Source of the DNA: Haplodiscus bocki
Lineage: Eukaryota
Length of the DNA stretch: 64,000 nucleotides
Assembly: GCA_965655095.1 (NCBI GenBank)
Contig: OZ296658.1
Location: 60,512,001-60,576,000, forward strand
Direction of reading: 5' to 3'
The notes below the pieces were generated by a model. It was not told the DNA's origin and made no database searches. It worked only from the letters and a program-made list of their open reading frames with translations. Made by a program: the position numbers and the translations under genes. Of the stretch, positions 1 to 50,560 are shown piece by piece. Within the stretch, counting starts at the first letter, position 1. Each line of letters begins with the position of its first letter.

Positions 1-3000
1 CCTCACAATGCGCTGCTTAGCTTGGAACACGCTACCTTGATTGCCATGTCTCTTTGTTAGACACACAGCGAACTGCTTCCTTTACGCGAGTGAATTTCGT
101 TAAGTTGTCATTGGAGGTGTCAAGCGAGAAATTGTCCTCTAGCGAAGGCAATTTGAGTTTCTCTTTGGGAAGCCAAGCTGGCAGCTATGAACCGTTGTGG
201 GAAAAACTTGTTTCAGACCACGTCAATCGTGCTCTGTTTCATTGGTTGCTTGTTTCAACTCGACCAAATATACTATCAAAACTGTATCGCATTGATACTG
301 CCCAACTAAATTGTTAAGATCCGTTGTTAATTAAAACGCGAAATACCCCAATAATGTCCCGAAGGTTCCCTAAAGTTCGCTCTGAAGTCTGGGTGACTTG
401 TTTTTTGGGCTGGCCGTTTCCATATAGCAAATTCAGTTTCGCTTCGAATCATGCTGTTTCGAAAGTGTGAACATTTTAGGACAAACTTTCTTTCCTAACA
501 TGCTTATGTTCATCAGTTCCAATAAAGATCGATTTTTTGCAGTGAGGAAAGAAAGTTCGGCTGACTGTTTTCAATCGGCCAAGTTAGACTAGCAGGAGAG
601 AAGGCCGCAATGAGACAAGCCATATAAAATGCCGTGATCCGTTTATGGCCAAACACTGATCTACTACGTTTTTGAGCTTGAGGTTCTTTCAATCAATTGA
701 GGTGTGGGCAAAAACTTCTCATGGGGCCTTTTTCAGGTGGCAGTAACACTTTTGCTTCCATACGAGTTTTGAAATCGACGATCCGTTGTGGGAAAAAAAT
801 CGTTTCAGATCACCTCAATCTGGCGATGTTCTTTGGTTGGTTGTTTCAACTCGACCGAAATGGACTAGCAAAACACAGTATGTCGTTCAAACTGGCTGTA
901 ATAACAAAGGTTAGACAAGGTTTGAAACACCTCGTTCTTCAGCGTGAGTTTCCTTAATGTTTTTTTTCAGGCGTTGTACAAAAATATTCTGGTCGCCTGT
1001 TCTCTTGTAGCACTATTTGTGTCACTTCGAAACATGCTATAATAAAAGCAATAATCCGTTTTAGGACAAATTGTTTTTTATCTACCTCGCTTATGCGCAT
1101 TAATTCCAATAAAAGTCATTGTGACGTTTTAAGTGAGGGATCCCTAATTGCTTGTCCTCTGTTGACTGGAGTATCCTTGCAGTTCTGAGATTCAATGCGA
1201 GATAATTTTTTTTATTTTTAAAATCCGCTCTGGGACAAGTCCACTGTGATGTGCCTCGTTCACGCGCATGACTTTCATTGAGCATCCAATTAATTTTGCG
1301 AGCTGGAAATTGTTGGTTGAGGGTATTCTGTCAGCCATGTTAGACTTGCAAAACTGCATTTCATTTCAAGAATGGTTGTGTTGATTGCACTGATACATTG
1401 TGCAAGAAACTTTGTCTCAACTCCTTTTTAGCTTTTGTTTGTTGGCCGCGTTAGCCCCGCAATATGTAGTATCGCTCCGAAATGGCGTTTAAATTCATGT
1501 CATCCTTGGTCAAGCAACCAGTGATATACCTCATTCATGTGGATGAATTTCGTCAAGTTGTCAATTGGTGTTTTGAACGAGCAACTGCTGCTTGGGTGTT
1601 CTTTCTTGACTATGTTACCCTCACAATGCGCTGCTTAGCTTGGAACACGCTACCTTGATTGCCATGTCTCTTTGTTAGACACACAGCGAACTGCTTCCTT
1701 TACGCGAGTGAATTTCGTTAAGTTGTCATTGGAGGTGTCAAGCGAGAAATTGTCCTCTAGCGAAGGCAATTTGAGTTTCTCTTTGGGAAGCCAAGCTGGC
1801 AGCTATGAACCGTTGTGGGAAAAACTTGTTTCAGACCACGTCAATCGTGCTCTGTTTCATTGGTTGCTTGTTTCAACTCGACCAAATATACTATCAAAAC
1901 TGTATCGCATTGATACTGCCCAACTAAATTGTTAAGATCCGTTGTTAATTAAAACGCGAAATACCCCAATAATGTCCCGAAGGTTCCCTAAAGTTCGCTC
2001 TGAAGTCTGGGTGACTTGTTTTTTGGGCTGGCCGTTTCCATATAGCAAATTCAGTTTCGCTTCGAATCATGCTGTTTCGAAAGTGTGAACATTTTAGGAC
2101 AAACTTTCTTTCCTAACATGCTTATGTTCATCAGTTCCAATAAAGATCGATTTTTTGCAGTGAGGAAAGAAAGTTCGGCTGACTGTTTTCAATCGGCCAA
2201 GTTAGACTAGCAGGAGAGAAGGCCGCAATGAGACAAGCCATATAAAATGCCGTGATCCGTTTATGGCCAAACACTGATCTACTACGTTTTTGAGCTTGAG
2301 GTTCTTTCAATCAATTGAGGTGTGGGCAAAAACTTCTCATGGGGCCTTTTTCAGGTGGCAGTAACACTTTTGCTTCCATACGAGTTTTGAAATCGACGAT
2401 CCGTTGTGGGAAAAAAATCGTTTCAGATCACCTCAATCTGGCGATGTTCTTTGGTTGGTTGTTTCAACTCGACCGAAATGGACTAGCAAAACACAGTATG
2501 TCGTTCAAACTGGCTGTAATAACAAAGGTTAGACAAGGTTTGAAACACCTCGTTCTTCAGCGTGAGTTTCCTTAATGTTTTTTTTCAGGCGTTGTACAAA
2601 AATATTCTGGTCGCCTGTTCTCTTGTAGCACTATTTGTGTCACTTCGAAACATGCTATAATAAAAGCAATAATCCGTTTTAGGACAAATTGTTTTTTATC
2701 TACCTCGTTTATGCGCATTAATTCCAATAAAAGTCATTGTGACGTTTTAAGTGAGGGAGCCCTAATTGCTTGTCCTCTGTTGACTGGAGTATCCTTGCAG
2801 TTCTGAGATTCAATGCGAGATAATTTTTTTTATTTTTAAAATCCGCTCTGGGACAAGTCCACTGTGATGTGCCTCGTTCACGCGCATGACTTTCATTGAG
2901 CATCCAATTAATTTTGCGAGCTGGAAATTGTTGGTTGAGGGTATTCTGTCAGCCATGTTAGACTTGCAAAACTGCATTTCATTTCAAGAATGGTTGTGTT

Positions 3001-6000
3001 GATTGCACTGATACATTGTGCAAGAAACTTTGTCTCAACTCCTTTTTAGCTTTTGTTTGTTGGCCGCGTTAGCCCCGCAATATGTAGTATCGCTCCGAAA
3101 TGGCGTTTAAATTCATGTCATCCCTTGTCAAGCAACCAGCTGTTTAACATTCATGTGGATGAATTTCGTCAAGTTGTCAGTTGCGGTTTCGAACGAGCAA
3201 CTGCTGCTGTTGGGATGTTCTTTTTTGACTTTGTTACCCTCTTAATGCGCTGCTTAGCTGGGAACACGCTAGATTGATTGCCATGACTCTTTGTTAGACA
3301 AACAGCGAACTGCTTCCTTTACGCGAGTGAATTTCGTTAAGTTGTCATTGGAGGTGTCAAGCGAGAAATTTTTCTTTGGCGAAGGCAATTTGAGTTTTGC
3401 TTTGGGAACCCAAGTTCGCAGCATTGAACCGTTGCGGGAAAGGTTTATTCCAGATCACCTCAAACTGGCGCCGTTTTACTGGTTGCTTGTTTCAACTCGA
3501 CCAAATATACCATCAAAACTGTATCGCATTGATATTGCCTAACTACATTGCTGCGACCCGTTGTTAATTAAAGGCGAAATATCCCATTCTTGTCCCGAAG
3601 GTTCCCTAAAGTTCGCTCCGAAGTCTGGGTGAATTGTTTTTTGGTTGGCCGTTTCCGGATATCAATTTCAGTTTTGCTTCGAATCATGCTGTTTTGAAAC
3701 TGTGAACATTTTAGGACAAACTTTGTTTCCTAACATGCTTATGCTCATCAGTTCCAATAAAGATCGATTTTTTGCAGTGAGGAAAAAAATATTGGTTGAC
3801 TGTTTTCAATCGGCCAAGTTAGACTAGCAGAACAGAGTGTTGCAAAGAGGAAAACCATTTACAATGCCGTGAACCGTTTATGGCCAAACACTGATCTACT
3901 ACGTTTTTGAGCTTGAGGTTCTTCCAATCAATTGAGGTGTGGACAAAAACTTCTCATGGGCCTTATTCGGGTAGCAGTAACACTTTTGCTTCCATACTAG
4001 TTCTGAAACCGATGATCCGTTGTGGGAAAAACTTGTTTCGGATCACCTCAATCTGGCGCTGTTCTGTAGCTTGGTTGTTTCAACTCGGCCAAATTAGACT
4101 AGCAAAACACAGTATCGCGTTCAAACTGGCTGTAATATCAAAGGTTAGACAAGGTTTGAAACACCTCGTTTTCCAGCGTGAGTTTCCTTAGTGTTTTTTT
4201 TCAGGCGTGATACAAAAATGTTTGGTCGCCTGTTCTTTTGTAGCACTTTTTGTGTCACTTGGAATCATGCTATCATAAAAGCAATAATCCGATTTGGGAC
4301 AAACTCTTTGTTATCTACCTCGTTTATGCGCATTAATTCCAATAAAAGTCACTGTGAGGTTTTGAGTGAGGGAGCCTTATTTGGTTGTCTTCTGTTGACT
4401 GGAGTGTCATTGCAGTTCTGAGCTTCAATGCGAGATAATATTTTCTATTTTTGTAATCCACTCTGGGAAAAGACCACTGTGATGTGCTTCGTTCACGCGC
4501 ATGAGTTTTATTGAGTTACCATTTATTTTTGCGAGCGCGAAATTGTTGGTTGAGGGTATTTTGTCAGCCGTGTTAGACTTGCAAAACTGCATTTCATTTC
4601 AAGAATCGTTGTGTTGATTGCACTGATGCATTGTGCAAGAAAGTTTGTCTCAGCTCGTTTTGAGCTTTTTTGTGTTGGCTGCGTTAGCCCCGCAATACGT
4701 AGTATCGCTCCGAGACGGCGTTTACATTCATGTCATCCCTTGTCAAGCAAGCAGCGGTTTAACATTCATGTGGATGAATTTCGTCAAGCTGTCAGTTGCG
4801 GTTTCGAACGAGCAACTGCTGCTTGGATGTTCTTTTTTGACTATGTTACCCTCACAATGCGCTGCTTAGCTTGGAACACGCTACCTTGATGGCCAAGACT
4901 ACTTGTTTGACAAACAGCGAACTGCTTCCTTCACGCGAGTGAATTTCGTTAAATTCTCATTGGAGGTGTCAAGCGAGAAATTTTTCTTTGGCGAAGGCAA
5001 TTTGAGTTTTGCTTTGGGAAGCCAAGTTCGCAGCAATGAACCGTTGCGGGAAAGACTTATTTCAGATCACCTCAAACCGGCGCCGTTTTATTGGTTGCTT
5101 GTTTCAACTCGACCAAATATACTATCAAAACTGTATCGCATTGATGCTGCCCAAATACATTGTTGCGATCCGTTGTTAATTAAAGGGCGAAATACCTCAT
5201 TCTTGTCCAGGAGGTTCCTTGATGCTCGCTCTAAAGTCTGGGTGAATTGTTTTTTGGTTGGCCGTTTCCAGATAGCAATTTCAGTTTCGCTTCGAATCAT
5301 GCTGTTTTGAAAGTGTGAATATTTTAGGACAAACTTTGTTTCCTAACATGCTTATGCTCATCAGTTCCAATAACGATAGAATTTTTGCAGTGAGGAAAAA
5401 AATATCGGTTGACTGTTTTCAATCGGCCAAGTTAGACTAGCAGAACAGAGTGTTGCAAAGAGAAAAACCATTTACAATGCCGTGATCCGTTTATGGACAA
5501 ACACTGAACTACTACGGTTTTGAGCTTGAGGCTCTTTCAATCAATTGAGGTGTGGGCAAAAACTTCTCATGGGGCCTTATTCAGGTAGCAGTAACACTTT
5601 TGCTTGCATACTAGTTTTGAAACCGACGATCCGTTGTGGGAAAAAATTGTTCCAGATCACCTCAATCTGGCGCTGTTCTGTTGCTTGGTTGTTTCAACTC
5701 GGCCAAAATATAATAGCAAAACACAGTATCGCGTTCAAACTGGCTGTAATAACAAAGGTTAGACAAGGTTTGAAACACCTCGTTCTTCAGCGTGAGTTTC
5801 CTTAGTGTTTTTTTTCAGGCGTGGTACAAAAATTCTGGTCGCCTGTTCTTTTGTAGCACTAATTGTGTGACTTCGAAACATGCTATAATAAAAGCAATAA
5901 TCCGTCTTGGGACAAATTCTTTGTTATCTACCTCGTTTATGCGCATTAATTCCAATAAAGGTCACTGTGAGGTTTTGAGTGAGGGCGCCTTAATTGGTTG

Positions 6001-6516
6001 CCCTCTGTTGACTGGAGTATCATTGCAGTTCTGAGCTTCAATGCGAGATAATATTTTCTTTTTTTTGTAGTCCACTCTGGGAAAAGACCACTGTGATGTG
6101 CTTCGTTCACGCGCATGAGTTTTATTGAGTTACCATTTATTTTTGCGAGCGCGAAATTGTTGGTTGAGGGTATTTTGTCAGCCGTGTTAGACTTGAAAAA
6201 GTGCATTTCATTCCAAGAATCGTTGTGTTGGTTGCACTGATGCATTGTGCAAGAAACTTTGTCTCAGCTCGTTTTGAGCTTTTGTTTGTTGGCCGCGTTA
6301 GCCCCGCAATACGTAGTATCGCTCCGAGACGGCGTTTACATTCATGTCATCCCTTGTCAAGCAAGCAGCGGTTTAACATTCATGTGGATGAATTTCGTCA
6401 AGTTGTCAGTTGCGGTTTCGAACGAGCAACTGCTGCTTGGATGTTCTTTTTTGACTTTGTTACCCTCTTAATGCGCTGCTTAGCTGGGAACACGCTAGAT
6501 TGATTGCCATGACTCT
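1..6516. repeat. Array A short-unit subtype (1612-1619 bp)
   Basis: Four periods lacking the 74-bp internal duplication. 1-~1500 and 1619-~3120 are nearly identical (differences seen at ~1090 and ~1141). Confidence 0.9.
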
Positions 6517-9500
6517 TTGTTAGACAAACAGCGAACTGCTTCCTTCACGCGAGTGAATTTCGTTAAATTCTCATTGGAGGTGTCCAGCGAGAAATTGTCC
6601 TCTGGCGAAGGCAATTTGAGTTTTGCTTTGGGAAGCCAAGTTAACAGCTATGAACCGTTGTGGGAAAAACTTGTTTCAGATCACCTCAATCGTGCTGTGT
6701 TTCATTGGTTGTTTGTTTCATCTCCACCAAATATACTATCAAAACTGTATCGCATTGATGCTGCCCAACTACATTGTTGCGATCCGTTGTTAATTAAAGG
6801 GCGAAATACCGAAATACCCCATTCTTGTCCAGGAGGTTCCTTGATGCTCGCTCTGAAGTGTGGGCGAATTGTTTGTGGTTGGCCGTTTCCAGATAAAAGT
6901 TTCAGTTTCGCTTCGAATCATGCTGTTTTGAAAGTGGGATCATTTTGGTACAAACCTTGTTTCCTAACATGATTATGCTCGTCAGTTCCAATAAAGATGG
7001 ATTTTTTGCAGTGAGGAAAGAAATATCGGTTGACTGTTTTCAATCGGCCAAGTTAGACTAGCAGAACAGAATGCCGCAATGAGACAAGCCATATACAATG
7101 CCGTGATCCGTTTATGGACAAACATTGAACTACTTCGTTTTTGAGCTTGAAGTTCTTTCAAGTTTCATTTGAGGTGTGGGCAAAAGTTTCTCATGTGGCC
7201 ATTTTCAGGTGGCAGTAACAGTTTTGCCTCCCTACAAGTTTTGATACCGATGATCCGTTGTTTGAAAAACTTGTTTCAGATCACCTCAAGCTGGCGCTGT
7301 TCTGTTGGTGGGTTGTTTCAACTCGGCCAAATTAGACTAGCAAAACAGAGTACAGGGTTGAGACTGGCTAATGGTTGGTTGGTTGGTTGTTTCAACTCGG
7401 CCAAAAGAAGTTAGCAAAACAGAGTGTCGCGTTGAGAATGACTATATAGACGAATGTTAGACAAAGTTCGAGAAACCTCGTTCTTGAGCATGAGTTTCCT
7501 GAGTGTTTTATTTTAAGGCGTGGTACAAAAATTTTTTGGTCGCCTGTTTTCTTGTGGCACTATTTGTGTCACTTCGAAACATGCTTCAATAAAAGCAGGA
7601 ATCCCTTTTGGGACAAACTCTTGTTATCCACCTCGTTTATGCGCATTGGTTCCAATAAAGGTTGATTTGAGGTTTTAGGTGAAGGAGCCTTGTTGGTTGT
7701 CTTCTGTTGATTGGGGTATCATTTCAGTTCCGAGCCTCAATGCGAGATAATTTTTATTTTTGTAATCAGCTCTGGGACAAGTCCACTGTGATGTGCCTCG
7801 TTCACGCGTATGAGTTTCATTGAGAATTCAATTAATTTTGCGACCGCGAAATTTTTGGTTGACGGGATTCTGTCAGCCGTGTTAGACTTGCAAAACTGCA
7901 TTTCATTTCAAGAATCGTTGTGTTGATTGCTCTGATGTTTTGTGCAAGAAACTTTCTCGCAGCTCGTTTTGAGCTTTTGTTTGTTGGCCGCGTTAGCCTC
8001 ACAATACATAGTATCGGTCCGAGACCGCGTTTACATTCATGTCATCATTAGTCAAGCAACCAGCGATATACCTCATTCATGTGGATGAATTTCGTCAAGT
8101 TGTCAATTGGTGTTTTGAACGAGCAACTGCTGCTTGGGTGTTCTTTCTTGACTATGTTACCCTCACAATGCGCTGCTTAGCTTGGAACACGCTACCTTGA
8201 TTGCCATGTCTCTTTGTTAGACACACAGCGAACTGCTTCCCTTACGCGAGTGAATTTCGTTAAGTTGTCATTGGAGGTGTCAAGCGAGAAATTGTCCTCT
8301 AGCGAAGGCAATTTGAGTTTCTCTTTGGGAAGCCAAGCTGGCAGCTATGAACCGTTGTGGGAAAAACTTGTTTCAGACCACCTCAATCGTGCTCTGTTTC
8401 ATTGGTTGTTTGTTTCATCTCGATGAAATATACTATCATAACTGTATCGCGGTGATACTGGCTACATACATTGCGGTAATCCGTTGTTAGTTAAAGGGCG
8501 AAACACCTCATTCTTGTCCAGGAAGTTCCTTGATGCTCGCTCTGAAGTGTGCGTGAATTGTTTGTGGTTGGCCGTTTCCAGATAACAGTTTCAGTTTAAC
8601 TTCGAATCATGCTGTTTTGAAAGTGTGATCATTTTGGTACAAACCTTGTTTCCTAACATGATTATGCTCGTCAGTTCCAATAAAGATGGATTTTTTGCAG
8701 TGAGGAAAGAAATATCGGTTGACTGTTTTCAATCGGCCAAGTTAGACTAGCAGAACAGAATGCCGCAATGAGACAAGCCATATACAATGCCGTGATCCGT
8801 TTATGGACAAACATTGAACTACTTCGTTTTTGAGCTTGAAGTTCTTTCAAGTTTCATTTGAGGTGTGGGCAAAAGTTTCTCATGTGGCCTTTTTCAGGTG
8901 GCAGTAACAGTTTTGCCTCCCTACAAGTTTTGATACCGATGATCCGTTGTTTGAAAAACTTGTTTCAGATCACCTCAAGCTGGCGCTGTTCTGTTGGTGG
9001 GTTGTTTCAACTCGGCCAAATTAGACTAGCAAAACAGAGTACAGGGTTGAGACTGGCTAATGGTTGGTTGGTTGGTTGTTTCAACTCGGCCAAAAGAAGT
9101 TAGCAAAACAGAGTGTCGCGTTGAGAATGACTATATAGACGAATGTTAGACAAAGTTCGAGAAACCTCGTTCTTGAGCATGAGTTTCCTGAGTGTTTTAT
9201 TTTAAGGCGTGGTACAAAAATTTTTTGGTCGCCTGTTTTCTTGTGGCACTATTTGTGTCACTTCGAAACATGCTTCAATAAAAGCAGGAATCCCTTTTGG
9301 GACAAACTCTTTGTTATCCACCTCGTTTATGCGCATTGGTTCCAATAAAGGTTGATTTGAGGTTTTAGGTGAAGGAGCCTTGTTGGTTGTCTTCTGTTGA
9401 CTGGGGTATCATTTCAGTTCCGAGCTTCAATGCGAGATAATTTTTTTTTCTTTTTGTAATCCGCTCTGGGACAAGACCACTGTGATGTGCCTCGTTCACG

Positions 9501-12500
9501 CGTATGAGTTTCGTTGAGAATTCAATTAATTTTGCGACCGCGAAATTGTTGGTTGAGGGGATTCTGTCAGCCGTGTTAGACTTGCAAAACTGCATTTCAT
9601 TTCAAGAATCGTTGTGTTGATTGCTCTGATGTTTTGTGCAAGAAACTTTCTCGCAGCTCGTTTTGAGCTTTTGTTTGTTGGCCGCGTTAGCCTCACAATA
9701 CATAGTATCGGTCCGAGACCGCGTTTACATTCATGTCATCCTTAGTCAAGCAACCAGCGATATACCTCATTCATGTGGATGAATTTCGTCAAGTTGTCAA
9801 TTGGTGTTTTGAACGAGCAACTGCTGCTTGGGTGTTCTTTCTTGACTATGTTACCCTCACAATGCGCTGCTTAGCTTGGAACACGCTACCTTGATTGCCA
9901 TGTCTCTTTGTTAGACACACAGCGAACTGCTTCCTTTACGCGAGTGAATTTCGTTAAGTTGTCATTGGAGGTGTCAAGCGAGAAATTGTCCTCTAGCGAA
10001 GGCAATTTGAGTTTCTCTTTGGGAAGCCAAGCTGGCAGCTATGAACCGTTGTGGGAAAAACTTGTTTCAGACCACCTCAATCGTGCTCTGTTTCATTGGT
10101 TGTTTGTTTCATCTCGATGAAATATACTATCATAACTGTATCGCGGTGATACTGGCTACATACATTGCGGTAATCCGTTGTTAGTTAAAGGGCGAAACAC
10201 CTCATTCTTGTCCAGGAAGTTCCTTGATGCTCGCTCTGAAGTGTGCGTGAATTGTTTGTGGTTGGCCGTTTCCAGATAACAGTTTCAGTTTAACTTCGAA
10301 TCATGCTGTTTTGAAAGTGTGATCATTTTGGTACAAACCTTGTTTCCTAACATGATTATGCTCGTCAGTTCCAATAAAGATGGATTTTTTGCAGTGAGGA
10401 AAGAAATATCGGTTGACTGTTTTCAATCGGCCAAGTTAGACTAGCAGAACAGAATGCCGCAATGAGACAAGCCATATACAATGCCGTGATCCGTTTATGG
10501 ACAAACATTGAACTACTTCGTTTTTGAGCTTGAAGTTCTTTCAAGTTTCATTTGAGGTGTGGGCAAAAGTTTCTCATGTGGCCTTTTTCAGGTGGCAGTA
10601 ACAGTTTTGCCTCCCTACAAGTTTTGATACCGATGATCCGTTGTTTGAAAAACTTGTTTCAGATCACCTCAAGCTGGCGCTGTTCTGTTGGTGGGTTGTT
10701 TCAACTCGGCCAAATTAGACTAGCAAAACAGAGTACAGGGTTGAGACTGGCTAATGGTTGGTTGGTTGGTTGTTTCAACTCGGCCAAAAGAAGTTAGCAA
10801 AACAGAGTGTCGCGTTGAGAATGACTATATAGACGAATGTTAGACAAAGTTCGAGAAACCTCGTTCTTGAGCATGAGTTTCCTGAGTGTTTTATTTTAAG
10901 GCGTGGTACAAAAATTTTTTGGTCGCCTGTTTTCTTGTGGCACTATTTGTGTCACTTCGAAACATGCTTCAATAAAAGCAGGAATCCCTTTTGGGACAAA
11001 CTCTTTGTTATCCACCTCGTTTATGCGCATTGGTTCCAATAAAGGTTGATTTGAGGTTTTAGGTGAAGGAGCCTTGTTGGTTGTCTTCTGTTGACTGGGG
11101 TATCATTTCAGTTCCGAGCTTCAATGCGAGATAATTTTTTTTTTTTGTAATCCGCTCTGGGACAAGACCACTGTGATGTGCCTCGTTCACGCGTATGAGT
11201 TTCGTTGAGAATTCAATTAATTTTGCGACCGAGAAATTGTTGGTTGAGGGGATTCTGTCAGCCGTGATAGACTTGCAAAACTGCATTTCATTTCAAGAAT
11301 AGTTGTGTTGATTGCTCTGATGGATTGTGCAAGAAACTTTCTCTCAGCTCGTTTTGAGCTTTTGTTGGCCGCGTTAGCCTCACAATACGTACTATCGGTC
11401 CGAGACCGCGTTTACATTCATGTCATCCTTGGTCAAGCAACCAGCGATATACCTCATTCATGTGGATGAATTTCGTCAAGTTGTCAATTGGTGTTTTGAA
11501 CGAGCAACTGCTGCTTGGGTGTTCTTTCTTGACTATGTTACCCTCACAATGCGCTGCTTAGCTTGGAACACGCTACCTTGATTGCCATGTCTCTTTGTTA
11601 GACACACAGCGAACTGCTTCCTTTACGCGAGTGAATTTCGTTAAGTTGTCATTGGAGGTGTCAAGCGAGAAATTGTCCTCTAGCGAAGGCAATTTGAGTT
11701 TCTCTTTGGGAAGCCAAGCTGGCAGCTATGAACCGTTGTGGGAAAAACTTGTTTCAGACCACCTCAATCGTGCTCTGTTTCATTGGTTGTTTGTTTCATC
11801 TCGATGAAATATACTATCATAACTGTATCGCGGTGATACTGGCTACATACATTGCGGTAATCCGTTGTTAGTTAAAGGGCGAAACACCTCATTCTTGTCC
11901 AGGAAGTTCCTTGATGCTCGCTCTGAAGTGTGCGTGAATTGTTTGTGGTTGGCCGTTTCCAGATAACAGTTTCAGTTTAACTTCGAATCATGCTGTTTTG
12001 AAAGTGTGATCATTTTGGTACAAACCTTGTTTCCTAACATGATTATGCTCGTCAGTTCCAATAAAGATGGATTTTTTGCAGTGAGGAAAGAAATATCGGT
12101 TGACTGTTTTCAATCGGCCAAGTTAGACTAGCAGAACAGAATGCCGCAATGAGACAAGCCATATACAATGCCGTGATCCGTTTATGGACAAACATTGAAC
12201 TACTTCGTTTTTGAGCTTGAAGTTCTTTCAAGTTTCATTTGAGGTGTGGGCAAAAGTTTCTCATGTGGCCTTTTTCAGGTGGCAGTAACAGTTTTGCCTC
12301 CCTACAAGTTTTGATACCGATGATCCGTTGTTTGAAAAACTTGTTTCAGATCACCTCAAGCTGGCGCTGTTCTGTTGGTGGGTTGTTTCAACTCGGCCAA
12401 ATTAGACTAGCAAAACAGAGTACAGGGTTGAGACTGGCTAATGGTTGGTTGGTTGGTTGTTTCAACTCGGCCAAAAGAAGTTAGCAAAACAGAGTGTCGC

Positions 12501-14972
12501 GTTGAGAATGACTATATAGACGAATGTTAGACAAAGTTCGAGAAACCTCGTTCTTGAGCATGAGTTTCCTGAGTGTTTTATTTTAAGGCGTGGTACAAAA
12601 ATTTTTTGGTCGCCTGTTTTCTTGTGGCACTATTTGTGTCACTTCGAAACATGCTTCAATAAAAGCAGGAATCCCTTTTGGGACAAACTCTTTGTTATCC
12701 ACCTCGTTTATGCGCATTGGTTCCAATAAAGGTTGATTTGAGGTTTTAGGTGAAGGAGCCTTGTTGGTTGTCTTCTGTTGACTGGGGTATCATTTCAGTT
12801 CCGAGCTTCAATGCGAGATAATTTTTTTTTTTTGTAATCCGCTCTGGGACAAGACCACTGTGATGTGCCTCGTTCACGCGTATGAGTTTCGTTGAGAATT
12901 CAATTAATTTTGCGACCGAGAAATTGTTGGTTGAGGGGATTCTGTCAGCCGTGATAGACTTGCAAAACTGCATTTCATTTCAAGAATAGTTGTGTTGATT
13001 GCTCTGATGGATTGTGCAAGAAACTTTCTCTCAGCTCGTTTTGAGCTTTTGTTGGCCGCGTTATTCTCGCAATGCGTAGTATCGGTCCGAGACCGCGTTT
13101 ACATTCAAGTCATCCCTTGTCAAGCAACCAGCGATATACCTCATTCATGTGGATGAATTTCGTCAAGTTGTCAATTGGTGTTTTGAACGAGCAACTGCTG
13201 CTTGGGTGTTCTTTCTTGACTATGTTACCCTCACAATGCGCTGCTTAGCTTGGAACACGCTACCTTGATGGCCAAGAGTACTTGTTTGACAAACAGCGAA
13301 CTGCTTCCTTCACGCGAGTGAATTTTGTTAAATTCTCATTGGAGGTGTCAAGCGAGAAATTGTCCTCTAGCGAAGGCAATTTGAGTTTCTCTTTGGGAAG
13401 CCAAGCTGGCAGCTATGAACCGTTGTGGGAAAAACTTGTTTCAGACCACCTCAATCGTGCTCTGTTTCATTGGTTGTTTGTTTCATCTCGATGAAATATA
13501 CTATCATAACTGTATCGCGGTGATACTGGCTACATACATTGCGGTAATCCGTTGTTAGTTAAAGGGCGAAACACCTCATTCTTGTCCAGGAAGTTCCTTG
13601 ATGCTCGCTCTGAAGTGTGCGTGAATTGTTTGTGGTTGGCCGTTTCCAGATAACAGTTTCAGTTTAACTTCGAATCATGCTGTTTTGAAAGTGTGATCAT
13701 TTTGGTACAAACCTTGTTTCCTAACATGATTATGCTCGTCAGTTCCAATAAAGATGGATTTTTTGCAGTGAGGAAAGAAATATCGGTTGACTGTTTTCAA
13801 TCGGCCAAGTTAGACTAGCAGAACAGAATGCCGCAATGAGACAAGCCATATACAATGCCGTGATCCGTTTATGGACAAACATTGAACTACTTCGTTTTTG
13901 AGCTTGAAGTTCTTTAAAGTTTCATTTGAGGTGTGGGCAAAAGTTTCTCATGTGGCCTTTTTCAGGTGGCAGTAACAGTTTTGCCTCCCTACAAGTTTTG
14001 ATACCGATGATCCGTTGTTTGAAAAACTTGTTTCAGATCACCTCAAGCTGGCGCTGTTCTGTTGGTGGGTTGTTTCAACTCGGCCAAATTAGACTAGCAA
14101 AACAGAGTACAGGGTTGAGACTGGCTAATGGTTGGTTGGTTGGTTGTTTCAACTCGGCCAAAAGAAGTTAGCAAAACAGAGTGTCGCGTTGAGAATGACT
14201 ATATAGACGAATGTTAGACAAAGTTCGAGAAACCTCGTTCTTGAGCATGAGTTTCCTGAGTGTTTTATTTTAAGGCGTGGTACAAAAATTTTTTGGTCGC
14301 CTGTTTTCTTGTGGCACTATTTGTGTCACTTCGAAACATGCTTCAATAAAAGCAGGAATCCCTTTTGGGACAAACTCTTTGTTATCCACCTCGTTTATGC
14401 GCATTGGTTCCAATAAAGGTTGATTTGAGGTTTTAGGTGAAGGAGCCTTGTTGGTTGTCTTCTGTTGACTGGGGTATCATTTCAGTTCCGAGCTTCAATG
14501 CGAGATAATTTTTTTTTTTTGTAATCCGCTCTGGGACAAGACCACTGTGATGTGCCTCGTTCACGCGTATGAGTTTCATTGAGAATTCAATTAATTTTGC
14601 GACCGCGAAATTTTTGGTTGACGGGATTCTGTCAGCCGTGTTAGACTTGCAAAACTGCATTTCATTTCAAGAATCGTTGTGTTGATTGCACTGATGTTTT
14701 GTGCAAGAAACTTTCTCTCAGCTCGTTTTGAGCTTTTGTTTGTTGGCCGCGTTAGCCTCACAATACGTACTATCGGTCCGAGACCGCGTTTACATTCATG
14801 TCATCCTTGGTCAAGCAACCAGCGATATACCTCATTCATGTGGATGAATTTCGTCAAGTTGTCAATTGGTGTTTTGAACGAGCAACTGCTGCTTGGGTGT
14901 TCTTTCTTGACTATGTTACCCTTACAATGCGCTGCTTACCTTGGAACACGCTACCTTGATGGCCAAGACTAC
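6517..14972. repeat. Array A long-unit subtype (1687-1697 bp) carrying a 74-bp internal duplication
   Basis: Five periods, each with a duplicated ggttgtttcaactcggccaaa...tagcaaaacagagt block (first copies at 7311, 9000, 10694, 12381, 14068). An identical 81-aa spurious ORF occurs at 7169, 8858, 10552, 12239, 13926. Confidence 0.92.
7311..7458. repeat. 74-bp internal tandem duplication with a (GGTT)4 microsatellite at the junction
   Basis: ggttgtttcaactcggccaaa at 7311 and 7385, with atggttggttggttggttgt at 7371-7390. Absent from units 1-4 and from the last unit (~15750). Confidence 0.9.
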
Positions 14973-15862
14973 TTGTTTGACAAACAGCCAACTGCTTCCT
15001 TTACGCCAGTGAATTTCGTTAATTTGTCATTGGAGGTGTCAAGCGATAAATTGTCCTCTGGCGAAGGCAATTTGAGTTTTGCTTTGGGAAGCCAAGTTAA
15101 CAGCTATGAACCGTTGTGGGAAAAACTTGTTTCAGATCACCTCAATCGTGCTGTGTTTCATTGGTTGTTTGTTTCATCTCCACCAAATATACTATCAAAA
15201 CTGTATCGCATTGATGCTGCCCAACTACATTGTTGCGATCCGTTGTTAATTAAAGGGCGAAATACCCCATTTTTGTCCAGGAGGTTCCTTGATGCTCGCT
15301 CTGAAGTGTGGGCGAATTGTTTGTGGTTGGCCGTTTCCAGATAACAGTTTCAGTTTCGCTTCGAATCATGCTGTTTTGAAAGTGTGATCATTTTGGTACA
15401 AGCCTTGTTTCCTAACATGCTTATGCTCGTCAGTTCCAATAAAGATGGATTTTTTGCAGTGAGGAAAGAAATATCGGTTGACTGTTTTCAATCGGCCAAG
15501 TTAGACTAGCAGAACAGAATGCCGCAATGAGACAAGCCATATACAATGCCGTGATCCGTTTATGGACAAACATTGAACTACTTCGTTTTTGAGCTTGAAG
15601 TTCTTTCAAGTTTCATTTGAGGTGTGGGCAAAAGTTTCTCATGTGGCCATTTTCAGGTGGCAGTAACAGTTTTGCCTCCCTACAAGTTTTGAAACCGATG
15701 ATCCGTTGTGGGAAAAATTTGTTTCAGATCACCTCAATCTGGCGCTGTTTTGTTGTTTGCTTGTTTCAACTCGGCCATAATAGATTAGAAAAAAACCGTA
15801 TCGCGTTCAAATTGGCTGTAATAACAAAGGTTAGACAAGGTTTGAAACATCTCGTTCTTCAG

Positions 15863-17080
15863 TACTTCTTTTTTGGGTTTGATGCTCTTTCAAGTTTCAT
15901 TTGAAGTGTTTGCAAAAGTTTTTTATTTGGCCTTTTGCAGGTGGCAGTAACCGTCTTGCTTCGAAACAAGTATTGAAAGCTGTGATACGTTGTGGGAAAT
16001 TTTTATTCATATATTTTTTATCTTGCGCTTTTTTTTGGTTGGTTGTTTCAGCTCGGCCAAATTAGACTAATGAAAGAGTGTATCGCGTTGCGATTGGCTA
16101 TATACAATGCTGCGATCCGTTGTCAGACAAAGCTCAAAACACCTCATTCTTGAGCTGAATTTCATTAAGGTTCTATTTCCATGGATGGTACAAGAAAATT
16201 TATGGTCGGTTGTTCTCTTGTGGCACCAGTTGTGTCACTTCGAAACATGCTATGAAAAAAGCTTTGATCCGTTTTGAGACAAACTCAATGTTATCCACCT
16301 CGTTTATGCGCATTAGTTCCAAGAAATGTTGATTCGAGGTTTTGAGTGAGGGAGCGCTGGTTGGTTGCCCTCTGTTGACTGGTTTTTCCTCGCAGTACTG
16401 AGCTTGGCTGAAAAAAAAATTTAAAAAATGCAATCTGCAAAAGGACAAGGCCTCTGCAATGTGGCTCGTTCATGCGCATGAGTTTTTTTGCGAGTCCAAT
16501 TGGGTTTGCGAGCAGGAAATTGTAAGTTGGAGGTATTCAGTCGGCCATTTTAGACTTGAAAACTGGAATTCACTCCGAGAAGCGCTATATTGATTGCTCT
16601 GATGCATTGTGCAAGAATTTGTTTCATCTCGTTTTGCACTTTTGTTTGTTGGATTCAGTTAGCCGCGTTAGCTTCGCAAAATGTGGTACAGCTTCAAGAC
16701 AGGGTGTCTTGGTTGCTATATCTTGGAAACGCGCCCAAGGTTGTCCCTTTGATCTGTTGTGAACCAAACTCAAACCCAATCACCTCATTCAAGCCCTAAT
16801 TTTTTGCTCGATTCGTCTCATTTGCACACGATATCACTGTTTTTTGCATTGTTTTCTCAATGCCTCCAGACATGGAAAAATAATGGCTGTGATCGGCTAA
16901 TAAACAAAAAGCAAAGTACCTCGTTTCAGCGTGTGAATCCCATAAGGTTTTCTGTTTGATGAGTCCGGTCAAAAGTTTTTGGTTAACCGTTTCAGGTGAG
17001 AGTTTCTAAAAATGCTTCGAGACATCCACGAAACAACGAAGACGATTTTTTGAGACATGCTATAGTTGCATTTGCAAAAG
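15863..17080. repeat. Degenerate, non-homogenised A-family monomers (old array edge)
   Basis: Recognisable A motifs with many substitutions: caggtggcagtaac (~15938), gtgtcacttcgaaacatgctat (~16232), ccacctcgtttatgcgcattagttcc (~16295), gccgcgttagc (~16662), acctcgtttcagcgtgtgaatccc (~16918). Confidence 0.85.
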
Positions 17081-20000
17081 CAAGTGTTATATCATAGATT
17101 TGTTCCGTTTTACCGAGTTGTGTACGCCTTCCGTTTGTGCCTGCATACTAGAGAAGCCTATATTTTGCTAGTGCCCTCTCATTTTGTCGCAAGAGATGAT
17201 TCTTGGCCCCTTTTGCAGAAAGTTTGTCTTAGTCACTCCTGCATTGCATTGCGCCTTTTAAAATAACAGTTATACACCAAAGTTAATTTACCTTCTGTGT
17301 ATTTGTTTAGTTAGCCGTATTGGTAGAAAAACTTTCTGATCAAAATCAGTCGAATTTGCTCCTTATGTTCACAAGTATTCCACTGGCACAAGTGTTGTCA
17401 AGCTGAGCTTCACCTCTGTGTCTTAGTTGTCAGACAGAGTAATTTTGAAGTAGCCTGTTTTTGTGCGTGATTTCCAATGAGAGTCCATTTGATATCTCGA
17501 GCAATGAATTGCTGTTTCGCGGCTTCCATTTGGTCAAGTTGGACCTGTAAATTTGGATTTGGCTTTCAGACACGTCTTATTGGTTGCTCGATTCCTCTTT
17601 GAGACGAACAGATTTCGTTTGAAAAGGTTTATACTCTTTTTTCCTGGTTGGTTCTTTCAGTAGACCAGGAAATGCTCGCAAAAAAGAGCTTCGCTTCGAG
17701 ACTTGCTCTAGTTATACTTGCGGAGGCAATTGTTATACCATACCATTTTCTCTTGTTCCATATGTTCAGAGCTTCCAACTCTTCCAATTAGGCCTACATA
17801 CTAAAAATGCCTGGACTTAGTTCGTGCGTTCACGATGTTTTTCCAAAAATTTGATCTCAAGGCCTATTTTTCTGACTGAATACTTGTTTGAATTAGGAAA
17901 CACTAGAATTAACTCTTGCAGCCCTTTGAGCTTGATAATTGTACATGAATTCACTTGAGATTAATGAACTTCCAAGCATTTGTTTAATCAGTAGTTTTGG
18001 TGGTAATGTTTCCTTCTCAAAGTCAGTTGTACTTGCTCGTTTTGTTCACTAGTGTTCGGTTGGCTGCAGTCTTGCCAAGCTCAGCTTCGCATCTCAGTTT
18101 TTGTTGTGGATCAAAAGAAACTCGAGCTACTTCCTTTGTGTGGATGAATTCCAATTGGAATCTATTGGATATCTCCAGCGAGAAAACGTTGGTTGGTTGT
18201 TTTCAGTTGGTCAGGTTCTACCTGCAATATAAAATTTCGTCTCCAAACACGCTGTTAGGATTGCTGCGACGCGTTGCTAGACAAAAACTAGTTTTGTTTT
18301 ACGTCGTTTAAGCGTTTCTTGTGTTTGTTGGTTGTTCAAGTAGACATGATTACGCTCTCATTAGGATGCTTTGCTCCGACGCATACATTAACAATTTCGC
18401 TTGAGCGACAATCCATCACAGTCTTTTTTTCCAACCGGTCACAGCTCGTCTTTGTGTCCTCCTAAAAAAGTTTCTTAGATTTTGTTCCTGCGTTTTTGAC
18501 TTCATGCAAAACTTTGGATCATGCGGTTTTTTTATTATTTCGGTTGCTTGTTTTATTTGAATGAAAACCGGAGTAATCACAACAGTTGTATAATTCTACA
18601 CCAGATAAATATTAAACCAGTGTCGACAAAATTTCTGAAAAATAGGTTGTTTATTAGGTTTGGGAGTACTTTTCCAATGTGAGCTTTAATTGTTCGTAAT
18701 GTTCATTGCTTTTCCGTCGGTGCAGGTATTGCCAGGCTCGGCTTCGCTTCTGTGTCTCAGTTGTGACAGAAAGTAATTTTGAACAAACACGTTCGTGTGC
18801 ATGAGTTCCGATTAGAGTTCTTTTGATGTTTCGATGGAGCAAATGTTGGTTGTTATTTTCAGTTGGTTAACTTAGAGAAGCAAGTTTTACTTTCGCTTCC
18901 CGACAGGCTATTATGATGAATGTTATCCACTACGAGACGAACTGATTTCTTTTCAAACAATTCCTACGCTTCCGTGTTGGTTGGTTATTTCACTTGGCCC
19001 TAATTTGCTCTGGAAAGGAGCTTCAGTTCGAAATTTTCTATGATTACACTTACGGAGGCAAATGCCAATTCATAGTGTTTTCCCTTTCTCCATCTAATAT
19101 ACAGTTTGCGCTTGCGCCTACCTAAAAAATATGCCAAGGTTCTGTTCAAACCCCCCTCAATTTGTTGCGAAGAGTTGTTCACAGGGCTTTTTTCATGTCT
19201 CTAGGCTCTCTGTAAATGAAAGACAACAAAATTCACTGCTGTAAAAGTTTGCGCCTTTTTTATAACTTTTTTCACTACAAAATTAATTTACTTTCTGTGT
19301 ACTTGTTTAGTTGCTTGTTTTGATAGAATCACTTTCCCTTCAATGTCAGTCGAACCTGCTTAATATGTTCACGTGTAATCCCTTAGCGGAAGTGTTACCA
19401 AGCTCAGTGTCACCTCGGTGTCTCAGTTGTTAGACAAGAAAAGTTTGAAACAGCTTTTTAATGTAATTGATTTCCAATTAGAGTCTTTGATATCTCAGGC
19501 GAGGAATGAAAGGTTTGCTAGTTTTCAGTTGGGGAAGTTAGACTAGCGTTAATGATTTTAGCTTACAGACACGCCATTCTGGTTGCCGTTATCCACTAAA
19601 AGACTCACTGACTTTCTTTGGAATGGTTTAGATGCTTTGGTTTTGGTTGGTCTTTTTAATGGCCCAGGTTATGCTCACAATAAAGAGCTTGGCTTCGAGA
19701 TTTATTGTAGTCTACTTGCTGAGGCTAGTGTTATGTCATACTATTTTCCGTTTTTTCCATCTATTCACAGCTTGCACTTGTGTCTACATTTCTAAGTTGC
19801 TCAGACCTAGCTCAAGCGTTCAAAGAGCTCCAAAGAACTGATTTCTTGGCCTATTTCTCAGCCTGGAAACTTGTTTCAGTTAAAAAGCACTAGAAATGGC
19901 TCCCATATCCCTTTCCGCAACACGAATTCACCAAGATCCACCTGAGATAAATCAAAGTCCGTGCATCAGTTTAATCAATGAATTTGCTGGTGACGCTTTT

Positions 20001-21300
20001 TTTCAAAGTCCACTAAATAAACTCGTTTTGTTCACTAGTGTTTGGTCGGTGGCACTCTCGCCAAGCTCAGTTTTGCCTCTCTGCTTTTTTTTGGTCAAGG
20101 TAAGCTCAAGTTACCTCATTTGAGTAGATGAGTTCCAATTGGTGTCCATTTGATGTAGCAAGCGAGAAATTGTTGGTTGCTTGTTCTCAGTTGGTTAACT
20201 TAGAAAAGCAAGTCTTAGCTTCGCTTCCCGACACGCTAATTTGATATATGTTCTCCATTACGAAACAAACTGATTTCCTTTCAAATATTTTCTACGCTTT
20301 CGTGTTGGTTGGTTATTTAAATTGGGCCTAATTTGCTCTGGAAAAGAACCTCAATTCGAGATTTTCTGTGATTACACTTACGGAGGCGAATGTCAATTCA
20401 AAGAGTTTTCCCTTTTTCCATTTAATTTACAATTTGCATTTGTGCCTACGTAGAAACATGCCAATGTTTTGTTAAACCCCCCTCAATTTGCTGCAGAAAT
20501 TTGTTCACGGGGCTTTTTATGTCTCCTGGTTCTCTTTAAAGGAAGAACAACAAAATTCACTTTCATCTTTCATTATAACTTTTCTACTACAGAGTTTAAA
20601 TAATTTCTGTGTAATTTTTTAGTTGCTTCTCTTGGTAGAATCACTTTCCCTAAAGAATTAGCTGAACTCGTTCGATATGTTCACAAGTAATCTACTGGCG
20701 CAAGTGTTGCTGAACTCAACTTGACCTATGTGTCTCAGTTGTGAGGCAAATTGAACTTGAAGTAGCTTTATAGTGTACGTGGTTTTCAAATGGAGTCCAT
20801 TTGATATCTCGAGCGAGGAATGAAAGGTTCTCTAGTTTTCAGTTGGTGAAGTTAGGTTAGCTTTTTTGAATTTAACAAACAGACACGCCAGATAATTATA
20901 TCTCATTGTTTTTTCGTTTTTTTTCCACCAGTTCAAAGCTCTAACTTGTGCCTACATAATTAGGTTGCAATTGCCTACACTTAGCTCATGTGTTCACGAT
21001 TACTTCCAAAAAACTGATACCTTGGCCAATTTTTCAGGCTGGATACTTGTTTCGTTTAAAAAACACTAGGAATAACTCCTGCAGCTGCTTCCGCTCCTCA
21101 ATTCTGTCAAAATGCACCTGAGATAAATGAATTTCCGTGCATTAGTTTACACAGTAGTTTTGGTGGTAACGTCTCCTTTTCAAAATCAATAAAACTTACT
21201 GGTTTTGTTCACTAGTGTTCAGTTGGTAGCACTCTTGTCGAGCTCAGCGTCACCTCTGCGTCTCAGTTGCGAGGCAAAGTAAACTTTAGGTAGCTTTCTA
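17081..21300. repeat. Divergent ~660-bp B-family subunits in irregular order (monomeric-like zone)
   Basis: The anchor ttgccaagctcagc-like occurs at 17395, 18072, 18729, 19395, 20058, 20707, 21235 (spacings 677, 657, 666, 663, 649, 528). No near-identical neighbours. Confidence 0.88.
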
Positions 21301-46700: not shown

Positions 46701-47118
46701 GCTTTGGTCTTGGTTGATCCTTCCAGTGGGCCAGGTTCTGTTTACAAAAAGAGACCTGCGCTTCAAGTTTTGCTGTAGTTCACCAGTGGAGGCAAGTTTT
46801 CTTTCGAACTGTTTTTAGTTTTTCCCCTCCGTTCAGTTCCTACTTTTGTGCCTGCAAACTAAAGTTGCCTAGAATTTGCTCAAGCGTTCACGATGTTTTC
46901 CATGCAAAGATTACCGTGGCTGGTTTTCCAGCTGGCACTTTTGTTTTAGTTGAACAACAACTGAAACGACACGCTAAAGTTGGTTGCGCTACTTCATATT
47001 AAATATATACACCTTAGTTGAGTAAACTTTTGTGTACTTGTGAAATCAGTAAGTTTGCTAGTACATCTTTACCTTCATTATCAGCAATACTTCTCGAGAT
47101 TTGCGCTAGTGTTCCCTT
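40725..47118. repeat. Recent amplification block: ~3.2 near-identical 1997-1998-bp units
   Basis: Identical peptides at 41867/43864/45862, 42233/44230/46228, 41021/43019/45016. Differences are mainly poly-T length and single substitutions. Confidence 0.93.
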
Positions 47119-47119
47119 G

Positions 47120-50100: not shown

Positions 50101-50560
50101 AACTTTCGGCTTTCTTCAATTGATTGACGACAAAAATCATTCCAGATTTGTTCTGCACCTCCCAGTACAATTGTTATATTCCAAAAGTAAATTGAATTCT
50201 GTGTAATTGTTTACTTGGTTTTTTGGTAGAATCACTTTCCCCATAACATTAGTTGAAATTGCTCGATAAAATCACAAGTAATCCACTGTCACGAATGTTG
50301 CCAAGCTCAGCGTCATCTCTGGGTCTCAGTTGTGAGGCAAAGTAAACTTGAAGTAGCTTTTAGTGTGTCTGACTTCCAATTACAATCCATTTGATATCTC
50401 TAACGAGGAATTAATGGTCCGCTACTTTCCAGTTGGTGAAGTTAAACTCGCAGTTTTAAATTCAGCTTGCACACACGCCAGGGTTTTTGCTGTAACCCAC
50501 TTTAAAGCACACGGCTTTTCTTTGGAAAGGTTTATTCGCTTTGGTCTTGGTTGGTCCTTC
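47120..50560. repeat. Pair of closely similar units with a 1842-bp period (~153-bp deletion at ~48932)
   Basis: ORFs 47619/49461 (offset 1842) and 48522/50363 (offset 1841). Junction reads ttttccagcttgc|ttctcgagatttgc. Confidence 0.88.

What the first reader, a model, noticed from the sequence alone, without database searches (positions are those of the whole stretch)
81..1699. Array A unit is a cryptic three-tier HOR: ~110-170-bp monomers, ~590-bp block, 1618-bp unit
A degenerate core (cctcgttca-N-gcatgagtttc-like) recurs within one unit at 81, ~351, 503, 669, 935, 1090, 1259, 1534 and 1699. Spacings are (270,152,166), (266,155,169), (275,165), i.e. blocks of 588, 590 and 440 bp, which sum to 1618. 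Each ~270-bp interval looks like one full plus one shortened monomer, giving ~11 monomers. Independent anchors support the ~590 period: ccgttgtgggaaaaa at 192/783, ttcgaa(t/a)catgct at 443/1026, ttttaggacaaa at 474/1059. Monomers within a unit are highly diverged while whole units are near-identical. That is the defining pattern of HORs such as primate alpha satellite (established knowledge), although this sequence is not recognisably alpha satellite.
Basis: partly seen in the sequence, partly recalled or inferred. Interest (0 to 1): 0.72.

Follow-up and report, generated by a model that had tools for sequence, protein, structure and literature searches.

The report
Hidden eleven-monomer satellite repeat, confirmed
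The 1.6-kb tandem repeat is non-coding satellite DNA whose unit is made of eleven very old, strongly diverged copies of a ~170-bp piece, four of them duplicated as a ~590-bp block; this is the layout known from centromere repeats, so it is real but ordinary.

Summary

- **~590-bp period:** real. 189-282 matches 780-874 at 82%, E 3e-20. Smith-Waterman z is 34 against shuffles.
- **~110-170-bp monomer tier:** real. A profile built only from a separate array of plain ~172-bp monomers, 115-250 kb upstream on the same chromosome, finds exactly 11 in-phase matches in the unit (E 5e-3 to 8e-15). It finds none in 100 shuffles.
- **HOR hallmark:** monomers cluster by position across diverged units.

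Two corrections:
- The 440-bp "third block" is not a demonstrable copy of the 590-bp block. The unit is best read as an 11-mer HOR with one internal four-monomer duplication.
- "Near-identical units" holds only for some pairs (98.6%). The other units are 87-91% alike.

Array A is small: 21-22 units, ~36 kb, found only here. It lies in a ~380-kb composite satellite domain whose arrays all use one monomer family. There is no gene, RNA family or protein domain. Centromere function is untested.

The scan has already reported similar hidden-monomer HOR satellites elsewhere in this genome. This is a new member of a known kind.

The parts
1..16688 (+). Array A as seen in the window. There are about 10 units: four of 1612-1621 bp, then 1687-1697-bp units, then a 73%-identical relic partial unit at 15863-16688. 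The whole array is C11:60,492,552-60,528,700 with 21-22 units.
   Evidence: BLAST of the unit on the window. Unit starts and identity matrix over 22 units. Monomer-profile hits cover 82% of it, all on the + strand.
76..1693 (+). One 1618-bp higher-order unit in monomer phase.
76..663 (+). Block 1 (588 bp), made of monomers M1a, M1b, M2, M3.
   Evidence: Block 1 vs block 2: Smith-Waterman z 34.5. About 66% identity over aligned columns.
664..1253 (+). Block 2 (590 bp), made of monomers M4a, M4b, M5, M6. It is the tandem duplicate of block 1.
   Evidence: The (M1b,M4b) clade has 94/100 support.
1254..1693 (+). The remaining 440 bp, made of monomers M7a, M7b, M8. They belong to the same monomer family but are not shown to be a copy of the 590-bp block.
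   Evidence: Block 3 vs blocks 1 and 2: z 5.3 and 3.0, and the signal comes from M8~M1a and M7a~M3.
76..205 (+). M1a, a short monomer with an internal ~22-column deletion.
   Evidence: C-only profile hit at 87-214, E 2.8e-9. Alignment A1.
206..345 (+). M1b, a 5'-truncated monomer.
   Evidence: C-only profile hit at 241-298, E 4.8e-3. A-derived profile hit at 208-344.
346..497 (+). M2, a short monomer.
   Evidence: C-only hit at 392-487, E 1.1e-7.
498..663 (+). M3, a full-length monomer.
   Evidence: C-only hit at 511-654, E 3.8e-11. B-only profile hit at 504-643, E 1e-6.
664..796 (+). M4a, a short monomer.
   Evidence: C-only hit at 687-806, E 4.8e-5.
797..929 (+). M4b, a 5'-truncated monomer. 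The 74-bp duplication of the 1.69-kb unit variant lies here.
   Evidence: C-only hit at 832-935, E 3.5e-5. for the duplication.
930..1084 (+). M5, a short monomer.
   Evidence: C-only hit at 942-1076, E 5.9e-9.
1085..1253 (+). M6, a full-length monomer.
   Evidence: C-only hit at 1093-1239, E 1.5e-7. B-only hit at 1091-1192.
1254..1418 (+). M7a, a full-length monomer. It is specific to array A: 22 copies in the genome, all in this array.
   Evidence: C-only hit at 1296-1411, E 7.8e-15. B-only hit, E 4.8e-11. Genome search.
1419..1528 (+). M7b, a half monomer covering profile positions ~55-165.
   Evidence: C-only hit at 1429-1482, E 5.3e-6..
1529..1693 (+). M8, a full-length monomer.
   Evidence: C-only hit at 1541-1681, E 2.6e-11. 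B-only hit, E 5.4e-8.
7304..7444 (+). A 74-bp tandem duplication (1.9 copies, 82% alike) inside M4b. It turns the 1.62-kb unit into the 1.69-kb unit and recurs in every 1.69-kb unit.
   Evidence: TRF. BLAST columns 1-817 then 753-1618..
17269..64000 (+). Array B: ~2.0-kb units, each made of three ~668-bp blocks. Each block holds one full and one half monomer of the same family plus ~420 bp that the monomer profiles do not recognise.

Best explanation
Array A is non-coding satellite DNA with a higher-order repeat (HOR) layout. Its 1618-bp unit is a head-to-tail string of eleven old copies of one ~165-172-bp monomer. Four copies are full length (M3, M6, M7a, M8). Four are shortened by an internal deletion (M1a, M2, M4a, M5). 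Three are cut at the 5' side (M1b, M4b, M7b). The order is S-T-S-L | S-T-S-L | L-T-L.

The likely history, inferred from divergence levels, is as follows.
1. A plain monomer array existed, like array C that still lies 115-250 kb upstream.
2. The monomers diverged to about 50% identity and picked up indels.
3. A four-monomer ~590-bp segment duplicated in tandem; its two copies are now about 66% alike.
4. The 11-monomer stretch began to be copied as one unit, by unequal crossing-over or gene conversion, giving 21-22 units.
5. A 74-bp length variant separates the 1.62-kb and 1.69-kb units. The 1.69-kb form was homogenised recently (95-99%) on both sides of an older, more mixed 1.6-kb core.

Shown: the architecture and the homologies. 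Inferred: the order of events, the recombination mechanism, and any role as (peri)centromeric heterochromatin.
For: - Unit tandem array.
- 590-bp duplication: (z 34.5).
- Monomer tier: an independent profile from array C finds 11/11 monomers in phase and 0/100 shuffles give a hit. A profile from array B alone finds 7 monomers in register. Alignment identity is 48.5% against 37.4 +/- 1.2% for shuffles. Local alignments are in register.
- Position-specific clades across diverged units, 94-100% support.
- Every A monomer is closer to the array C monomer C1 (53-62%) than to its unit mates (mean 49%), as expected for separate descent from a C-like ancestor.
- All 256 profile hits in the window are on the + strand and cover 82% of A.
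- No Rfam family, tRNA, long conserved ORF or Pfam domain.
- Short contigs from two samples cover the whole stretch.
Against: - Monomer identity (~49%) is far lower than in textbook HORs, so gapless autocorrelation is only borderline.
- Two monomers (M1b, M4a) score weakly with the independent profile (E 5e-3, 5e-5).
- The last 440 bp does not fit the 590-bp block.
- The array is small (~36 kb) and unique, so it is not a major satellite by itself.
- No data here bear on chromatin, CENP-A or transcription.
Confidence: 0.9

Rival explanations
1. Strict three-tier reading. The 440-bp tail is a truncated third copy of the ~590-bp block, so the unit is 2.75 copies of a former 590-bp tandem repeat.
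For: The interval pattern (270,152,166), (266,155,169), (275,165) looks parallel. M7 also consists of one monomer plus a shortened one.
Against: - M7 vs M1 and M7 vs M4 are not above shuffles (z 1.9 and 2.4). M8 vs M2/M5 gives z -0.6 and 2.3. M8 matches M1a (z 8.4) and M7a matches M3 (z 6.6) instead.
- M7a is full length and M7b is a half monomer, whereas M1a/M4a carry an internal deletion and M1b/M4b lack only ~12-18 positions.
- No separate 590-bp array exists in the genome.
Confidence: 0.12
2. Chance recurrence. The recurring core and anchors are chance or compositional matches in a T-rich 1.6-kb repeat, and there is no monomer tier.
For: Gapless autocorrelation peaks do not clearly exceed shuffle maxima. 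The core is weak at 351, 503 and 669.
Against: - The independent array C profile finds 11 in-phase hits and none in 100 shuffles, where the best score is 3.8 bits.
- The array B profile hits in register.
- BLAST E 3e-20 for the 590-bp shift.
Confidence: 0.01
3. Transposon or gene origin. The 1.6-kb unit is a tandemly amplified piece of a mobile element or gene cluster (for example Helitron- or LTR-derived tandem repeats, or rDNA spacer subrepeats) rather than a satellite grown from a monomer array.
For: Array B blocks contain ~420 bp that the monomer profile does not recognise. Earlier notes report many Helitron-like and LTR elements in this genome (unchecked).
Against: - 82% of array A is covered by monomer hits with no foreign insert.
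- No ORF with a Pfam domain, no rRNA, tRNA or other Rfam family.
- The same monomer forms a 118-kb plain array nearby.
Confidence: 0.05

Closest known systems
Primate alpha-satellite higher-order repeats
   Same: The monomer is near nucleosome length (~165-172 bp against 171 bp). The multi-monomer unit is repeated head to tail. The same position in different units is much more alike than neighbours within a unit. Several distinct HOR arrays of one monomer family lie side by side, with diverged relic units at the array edges.
   Different: No sequence relation is claimed or was tested. Monomers here are ~49% alike, against the 60-80% I recall for alpha satellite (from memory, not tested). Several monomers are truncated or carry deletions. 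The array is only ~36 kb. The young homogenised units flank an older core, rather than the reverse. Centromere function is unknown.
Cascading HORs / superHORs of alpha satellite (Gluncic and co-workers, PMC11050224, PMC12428378; listing and abstract openings seen, papers not read)
   Same: A HOR unit that holds a repeated sub-block of monomers inside it. Here a four-monomer block is present twice in an 11-mer.
   Different: Here the inner duplication is ancient (~66% identity) and has only two copies. In the primate cases the inner copies are recognisably similar monomer types.
Other hidden-monomer HOR satellites noted by this scan in the same genome (s1-381258, s1-381257, s1-354055, s1-354081)
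   Same: A kilobase-scale tandem unit built of very diverged 166-180-bp monomers, non-coding, with centromere role untested (AI notes).
   Different: They lie on other stretches of the genome. I could not test whether their monomers belong to the same family. BLAST-level copies of the A and C monomers are confined to this locus on C11. The top 150 profile hits add only a small B-like array on C5.

Membership tests
Higher-order repeat (HOR) satellite | Head-to-tail tandem array of a unit longer than the basic monomer | tested here: met
   21-22 units of 1.60-1.70 kb, all on the + strand.
Higher-order repeat (HOR) satellite | The unit is a string of mutually homologous monomers | tested here: met
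   11 in-phase hits of a profile built from a different array, with 0 hits in 100 shuffles. Alignment identity is 48.5% against 37.4% for shuffles.
Higher-order repeat (HOR) satellite | Monomers at the same position of different units are much more alike than monomers within a unit | tested here: met
   Units are 87-99% alike. Monomers within a unit are 39-64% alike, mean 49%. Position-specific clades have 94-100% support.
Higher-order repeat (HOR) satellite | The monomer family also exists outside this HOR (monomeric or other HOR arrays) | tested here: met
   Array C has ~172-bp monomers with a 520-bp 3-mer HOR over ~118 kb. Array B holds 1.5 monomers per 668-bp block.
Nested / cascading HOR (three tiers) | A sub-block of several monomers recurs inside the HOR unit | tested here: met
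   M1a-M1b-M2-M3 vs M4a-M4b-M5-M6: z 34.5, BLAST E 3e-20.
Nested / cascading HOR (three tiers) | The whole unit is made up of copies of that sub-block (the third 440-bp block is a truncated copy) | tested here: not met
   M7a, M7b and M8 do not pair with the block positions expected.
Centromeric satellite | Bound by the centromeric histone (CENP-A/CenH3), or lying at the cytological centromere | not testable with these tools
   No chromatin or cytological data. The locus is at 60.3-60.6 Mb of a 91.8-Mb contig.
Centromeric satellite | One main domain of the family per chromosome | tested here: inconclusive
   Among the scored hits the family is concentrated in one ~380-kb domain on C11, with a ~5-kb array on C5. 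Only the best 150 candidates were scored.
Primate alpha satellite | Sequence homology to the 171-bp alpha monomer | not tested
No alpha-satellite reference was at hand and the genome is a non-vertebrate animal by earlier notes.

The most novel reading that the evidence does not exclude
The ~380-kb composite domain on C11 is the centromere of this chromosome. It runs array C, a ~115-kb stretch without the satellite where sampled, array A, then array B, all built from one ~170-bp monomer family in one orientation. On this reading array A is a fossil HOR layer whose 11-mer unit has kept its register through more than 30% divergence. If the genome is an acoel's, as earlier notes suggest, this would show alpha-satellite-like layered centromere evolution in an early-branching bilaterian lineage.
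Probability: 0.2. Interest if true: 0.55.

Novelty: new member of a known kind. Interest (0 to 1): 0.3.

Why it matters
It shows that kilobase-unit 'complex' satellites in this genome can be resolved into nucleosome-length monomers. These monomers are too diverged for TRF, which reported only a 74-bp repeat here, or for plain autocorrelation, which was borderline. A profile taken from a neighbouring plain array is enough to decode them. The result is a monomer model and a map of three related arrays (C, A, B), usable as FISH or ChIP targets to find out whether this domain is a centromere. In itself the architecture is the known HOR pattern, and the scan has seen it several times in this genome.

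Tried and rejected
- **Whole-unit genome search:** not scored, too many candidates. Replaced by single-monomer and two-monomer queries.
- **Gapless circular autocorrelation:** peaks fall at the predicted shifts but do not clearly exceed shuffle maxima, so it is not used as proof.
- **Random-partition control for the MAFFT alignment:** uninformative, because local alignment re-registers the pieces.
- **Direct BLAST of array B unit vs array A unit:** nothing at E<0.01. The relation appears only with profiles.
- **Iterated profiles on array B:** the ~420 bp per block stayed unrecognised.
- **Is the single 74-bp copy of the 1.62-kb units a hybrid of the two copies in the 1.69-kb units?** Inconclusive, 81% vs 76%.
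- **Crude test of the 14-bp dyad reported by another note:** best dyads at monomer starts average 4.25 of 7 pairs, against 3.87 for the background, and none reach 6. No support from this test.
- **Organism name:** coded in the run search. Earlier notes disagree (acoel-like vs coral) and I did not test it. The published Symsagittifera roscoffensis assembly (1.1 Gb, N50 1 Mb) does not match this assembly's size and contiguity.
- **Findings search:** blank by sequence. Negative offsets are not accepted. One malformed paper query.
- **Literature:** no paper on acoel satellite DNA in the library.

Full report
**What is there**

The window is G000:C11:60,512,001-60,576,000 of a 1.5-Gb assembly; the contig is 91.8 Mb. 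K-mer periods and BLAST show two long-unit tandem arrays.
- Array A covers 1-16,688. It starts with units of 1612-1621 bp and continues with units of 1687-1697 bp.
- Array B covers about 17,269-64,000, with ~2.0-kb units.
- Nothing in the window reaches an Rfam gathering score. There is no tRNA. Only 12 ORFs reach 120 aa, the longest being 221 aa, and the four I tested have no Pfam domain.
- The DNA is about 40% G+C and T-rich on the + strand throughout.

**The observation**

- The three anchor words are at 192/783, 443/1026 and 474/1059.
- The degenerate core is at the nine listed sites. It is clear at 81, 935, 1090, 1259 and 1534, and weak at 351, 503 and 669.
- The spacings sum to the 1618-bp unit.

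**The ~590-bp tier**

- BLAST of the unit against itself gives 189-282 vs 780-874 (82%, E 3e-20) and 436-526 vs 1019-1113 (70.5%, E 1e-6), both at a shift of 583-591.
- Against 200 dinucleotide-preserving shuffles, block 1 (76-663) vs block 2 (664-1253) has Smith-Waterman z 34.5.
- The positional monomer pairs M1/M4, M2/M5 and M3/M6 have z 24, 8.4 and 6.9.
- A global alignment gives about 66% identity over aligned columns.

**The monomer tier**

- Twelve of the 28 monomer pairs beat all 200 shuffles. Most of the best non-positional alignments start at the same offset from the proposed monomer starts, for example M1 3-59 vs M8 3-59 and M7 1-148 vs M8 1-147.
- Splitting each ~270-bp interval in two gives 11 pieces. 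They align with 48.5% mean identity, against 37.4 +/- 1.2% for shuffled pieces.
- The strongest tests use information from outside array A.
  - A profile built from the 11 pieces finds near-full-length matches in array B, one per ~668-bp block (E 1e-14, 2e-15).
  - A profile built from only the three array B monomers finds seven of the A monomers, each in register.
  - A sequence-only model searched over the whole genome scored best on a separate array, here called C, at C11:60.259-60.377 Mb. Its top hits outscored the best array A monomer listed.
  - Array C is a plain head-to-tail run of ~172-bp monomers (median spacing 172.5 bp), mostly as a 520-bp three-monomer HOR.
  - A profile built from array C alone finds exactly eleven in-phase hits in the 1618-bp unit, one per proposed monomer (E 5e-3 to 8e-15). 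It finds none at E<=0.01 in 100 shuffles, where the best score is 3.8 bits.

Plain gapless autocorrelation would not have settled this.

**Anatomy of the unit**

- By alignment and profile coordinates the monomers fall into three forms.
  - Full length, ~165 bp: M3, M6, M7a, M8.
  - Short, with an internal ~22-column deletion: M1a, M2, M4a, M5.
  - 5'-truncated: M1b, M4b, M7b.
- The order is S-T-S-L | S-T-S-L | L-T-L.
- Monomers within a unit are 39-64% alike (mean 49%) over profile columns. Each is closer to the array C monomer C1 (53-62%). This fits separate descent from a C-like ancestor.
- In a maximum-likelihood tree of monomers from five diverged units, each of the 11 positions forms its own clade (94-100% support) apart from rows of the relic edge unit. 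Deeper down, (M1b,M4b) and (M2,M5,M4a) are supported.
- The gamma shape of 9.2 in that tree points to fairly even rates along the monomer, so I see no sharply conserved box. A crude test of the 14-bp dyad noted by another reader was not above background.

- The last 440 bp is not a demonstrable truncated copy of the 590-bp block.
  - M7 vs M1 and M7 vs M4 are at shuffle level.
  - M8 resembles M1a and M7a resembles M3.
  - The internal make-up of the 275-bp interval (full plus half monomer) differs from that of the 270- and 266-bp intervals (deleted plus slightly truncated monomer).
  - No independent 590-bp array exists in the genome.
  - Tier 2 is therefore one old tandem duplication inside an 11-mer.
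- Units are not uniformly near-identical. Over the whole array (22 units) there are two classes.
  - The 1.69-kb units on both flanks are 95-99% alike.
- The 1.69-kb form differs by a 74-bp tandem duplication inside M4b whose copies are 82% alike.
- Relic units, 60-69% identical on the left and 73-85% on the right, sit at the two array ends.

**Context**

- Array A is small and unique: M7a has 22 copies and M2+M3 has 21, all in this array.
- It lies in a composite domain with this order:
  - array C, ~118 kb;
  - ~115 kb without the satellite at the three places sampled (L002, L003, and L020 beyond ~60.377 Mb);
  - array A, ~36 kb;
  - array B, ~107 kb, ending before 60.636 Mb.
- All arrays are in the same orientation.
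- A ~5-kb B-like array lies on C5 on the other strand.
- Array B blocks hold one and a half monomers plus ~420 bp that no profile recognised.
- Short contigs from two samples of the same organism cover all of 1-6000, so the sequence is not peculiar to one assembly. A run labelled as another organism holds four 151-bp contigs at 92-99%.

**Mechanism**

The structures are shown. The order of events, and the mechanism of unequal exchange or conversion as the copying process, are inferred from divergence levels and from established knowledge of satellite evolution. Nothing here tests chromatin state, transcription or centromere function.

**Comparison and novelty**

All tested HOR criteria are met, so this is a HOR satellite with an inner duplicated sub-block. 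It is close in form to alpha-satellite HORs and to the cascading HORs or superHORs listed for primates (PMC11050224, PMC12428378; only the listing and abstract openings were seen). It differs in several ways:
- the monomers are far older (~49% identity);
- some monomers are truncated;
- the array is small;
- the young units flank an older core.

Earlier notes of this scan report several other hidden-monomer (166-180 bp) HOR satellites in the same genome. I found no paper on satellites of acoels, the lineage those notes suggest. I did not verify the lineage.

**Verdict**

It is a new member of a known kind, of modest interest.

Noticed in passing
L007-L018, L020, L021 (G000:C11:60,259,070-60,377,000): Array C: about 118 kb of plain ~172-bp monomers, mostly a 520-bp three-monomer HOR with monomers 69-78% alike. 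It belongs to the same family as the monomers of arrays A and B and is closer to the family consensus than any array A monomer.
   Followed up: partly
window 17269-64000 and L004, L005: Array B's 2.0-kb unit is three ~668-bp blocks. Each block holds one full and one half monomer plus ~420 bp of sequence that no monomer profile recognises. Length variants of 1763, 1775, 1842 and 1984 bp form sub-arrays. In L005 the blocks are much more diverged.
   Followed up: partly
L019+L001+window 1-18000 (C11:60,492,552-60,528,700): The young, 95-99% identical 1.69-kb units lie on both sides of seven older, more mixed 1.60-1.62-kb units. Unit 16 on the right is 99% identical to units 2-7 on the left, across 11 kb. 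This is the reverse of the usual 'young core, old flanks' layering.
   Followed up: partly
L023 (G000:C5:7,091,600-7,096,400, minus strand): A small (~5 kb) B-like array of the same monomer family on another chromosome-scale contig.
   Followed up: no
window 1486-1636, 1813-1918, 5655-5983: A run labelled as a different organism (X5, organism B, another study) holds four 151-bp contigs 92-99% identical to array A at depth 3. This could be a close relative, a mixed sample or carry-over.
   Followed up: no
window 81-94, 503-516, 1259-1272, 1534-1547: The 14-bp dyad at monomer starts, noted by another reader (s1-354148), reaches only 5 of 7 Watson-Crick pairs at best. On average it is not above the background of the unit in a crude test.
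   Followed up: partly
window 16720-17462: The junction between arrays A and B has about 740 bp without any monomer-profile hit. It lies between a 73%-identical relic A unit and 67%-identical relic B units.
   Followed up: no
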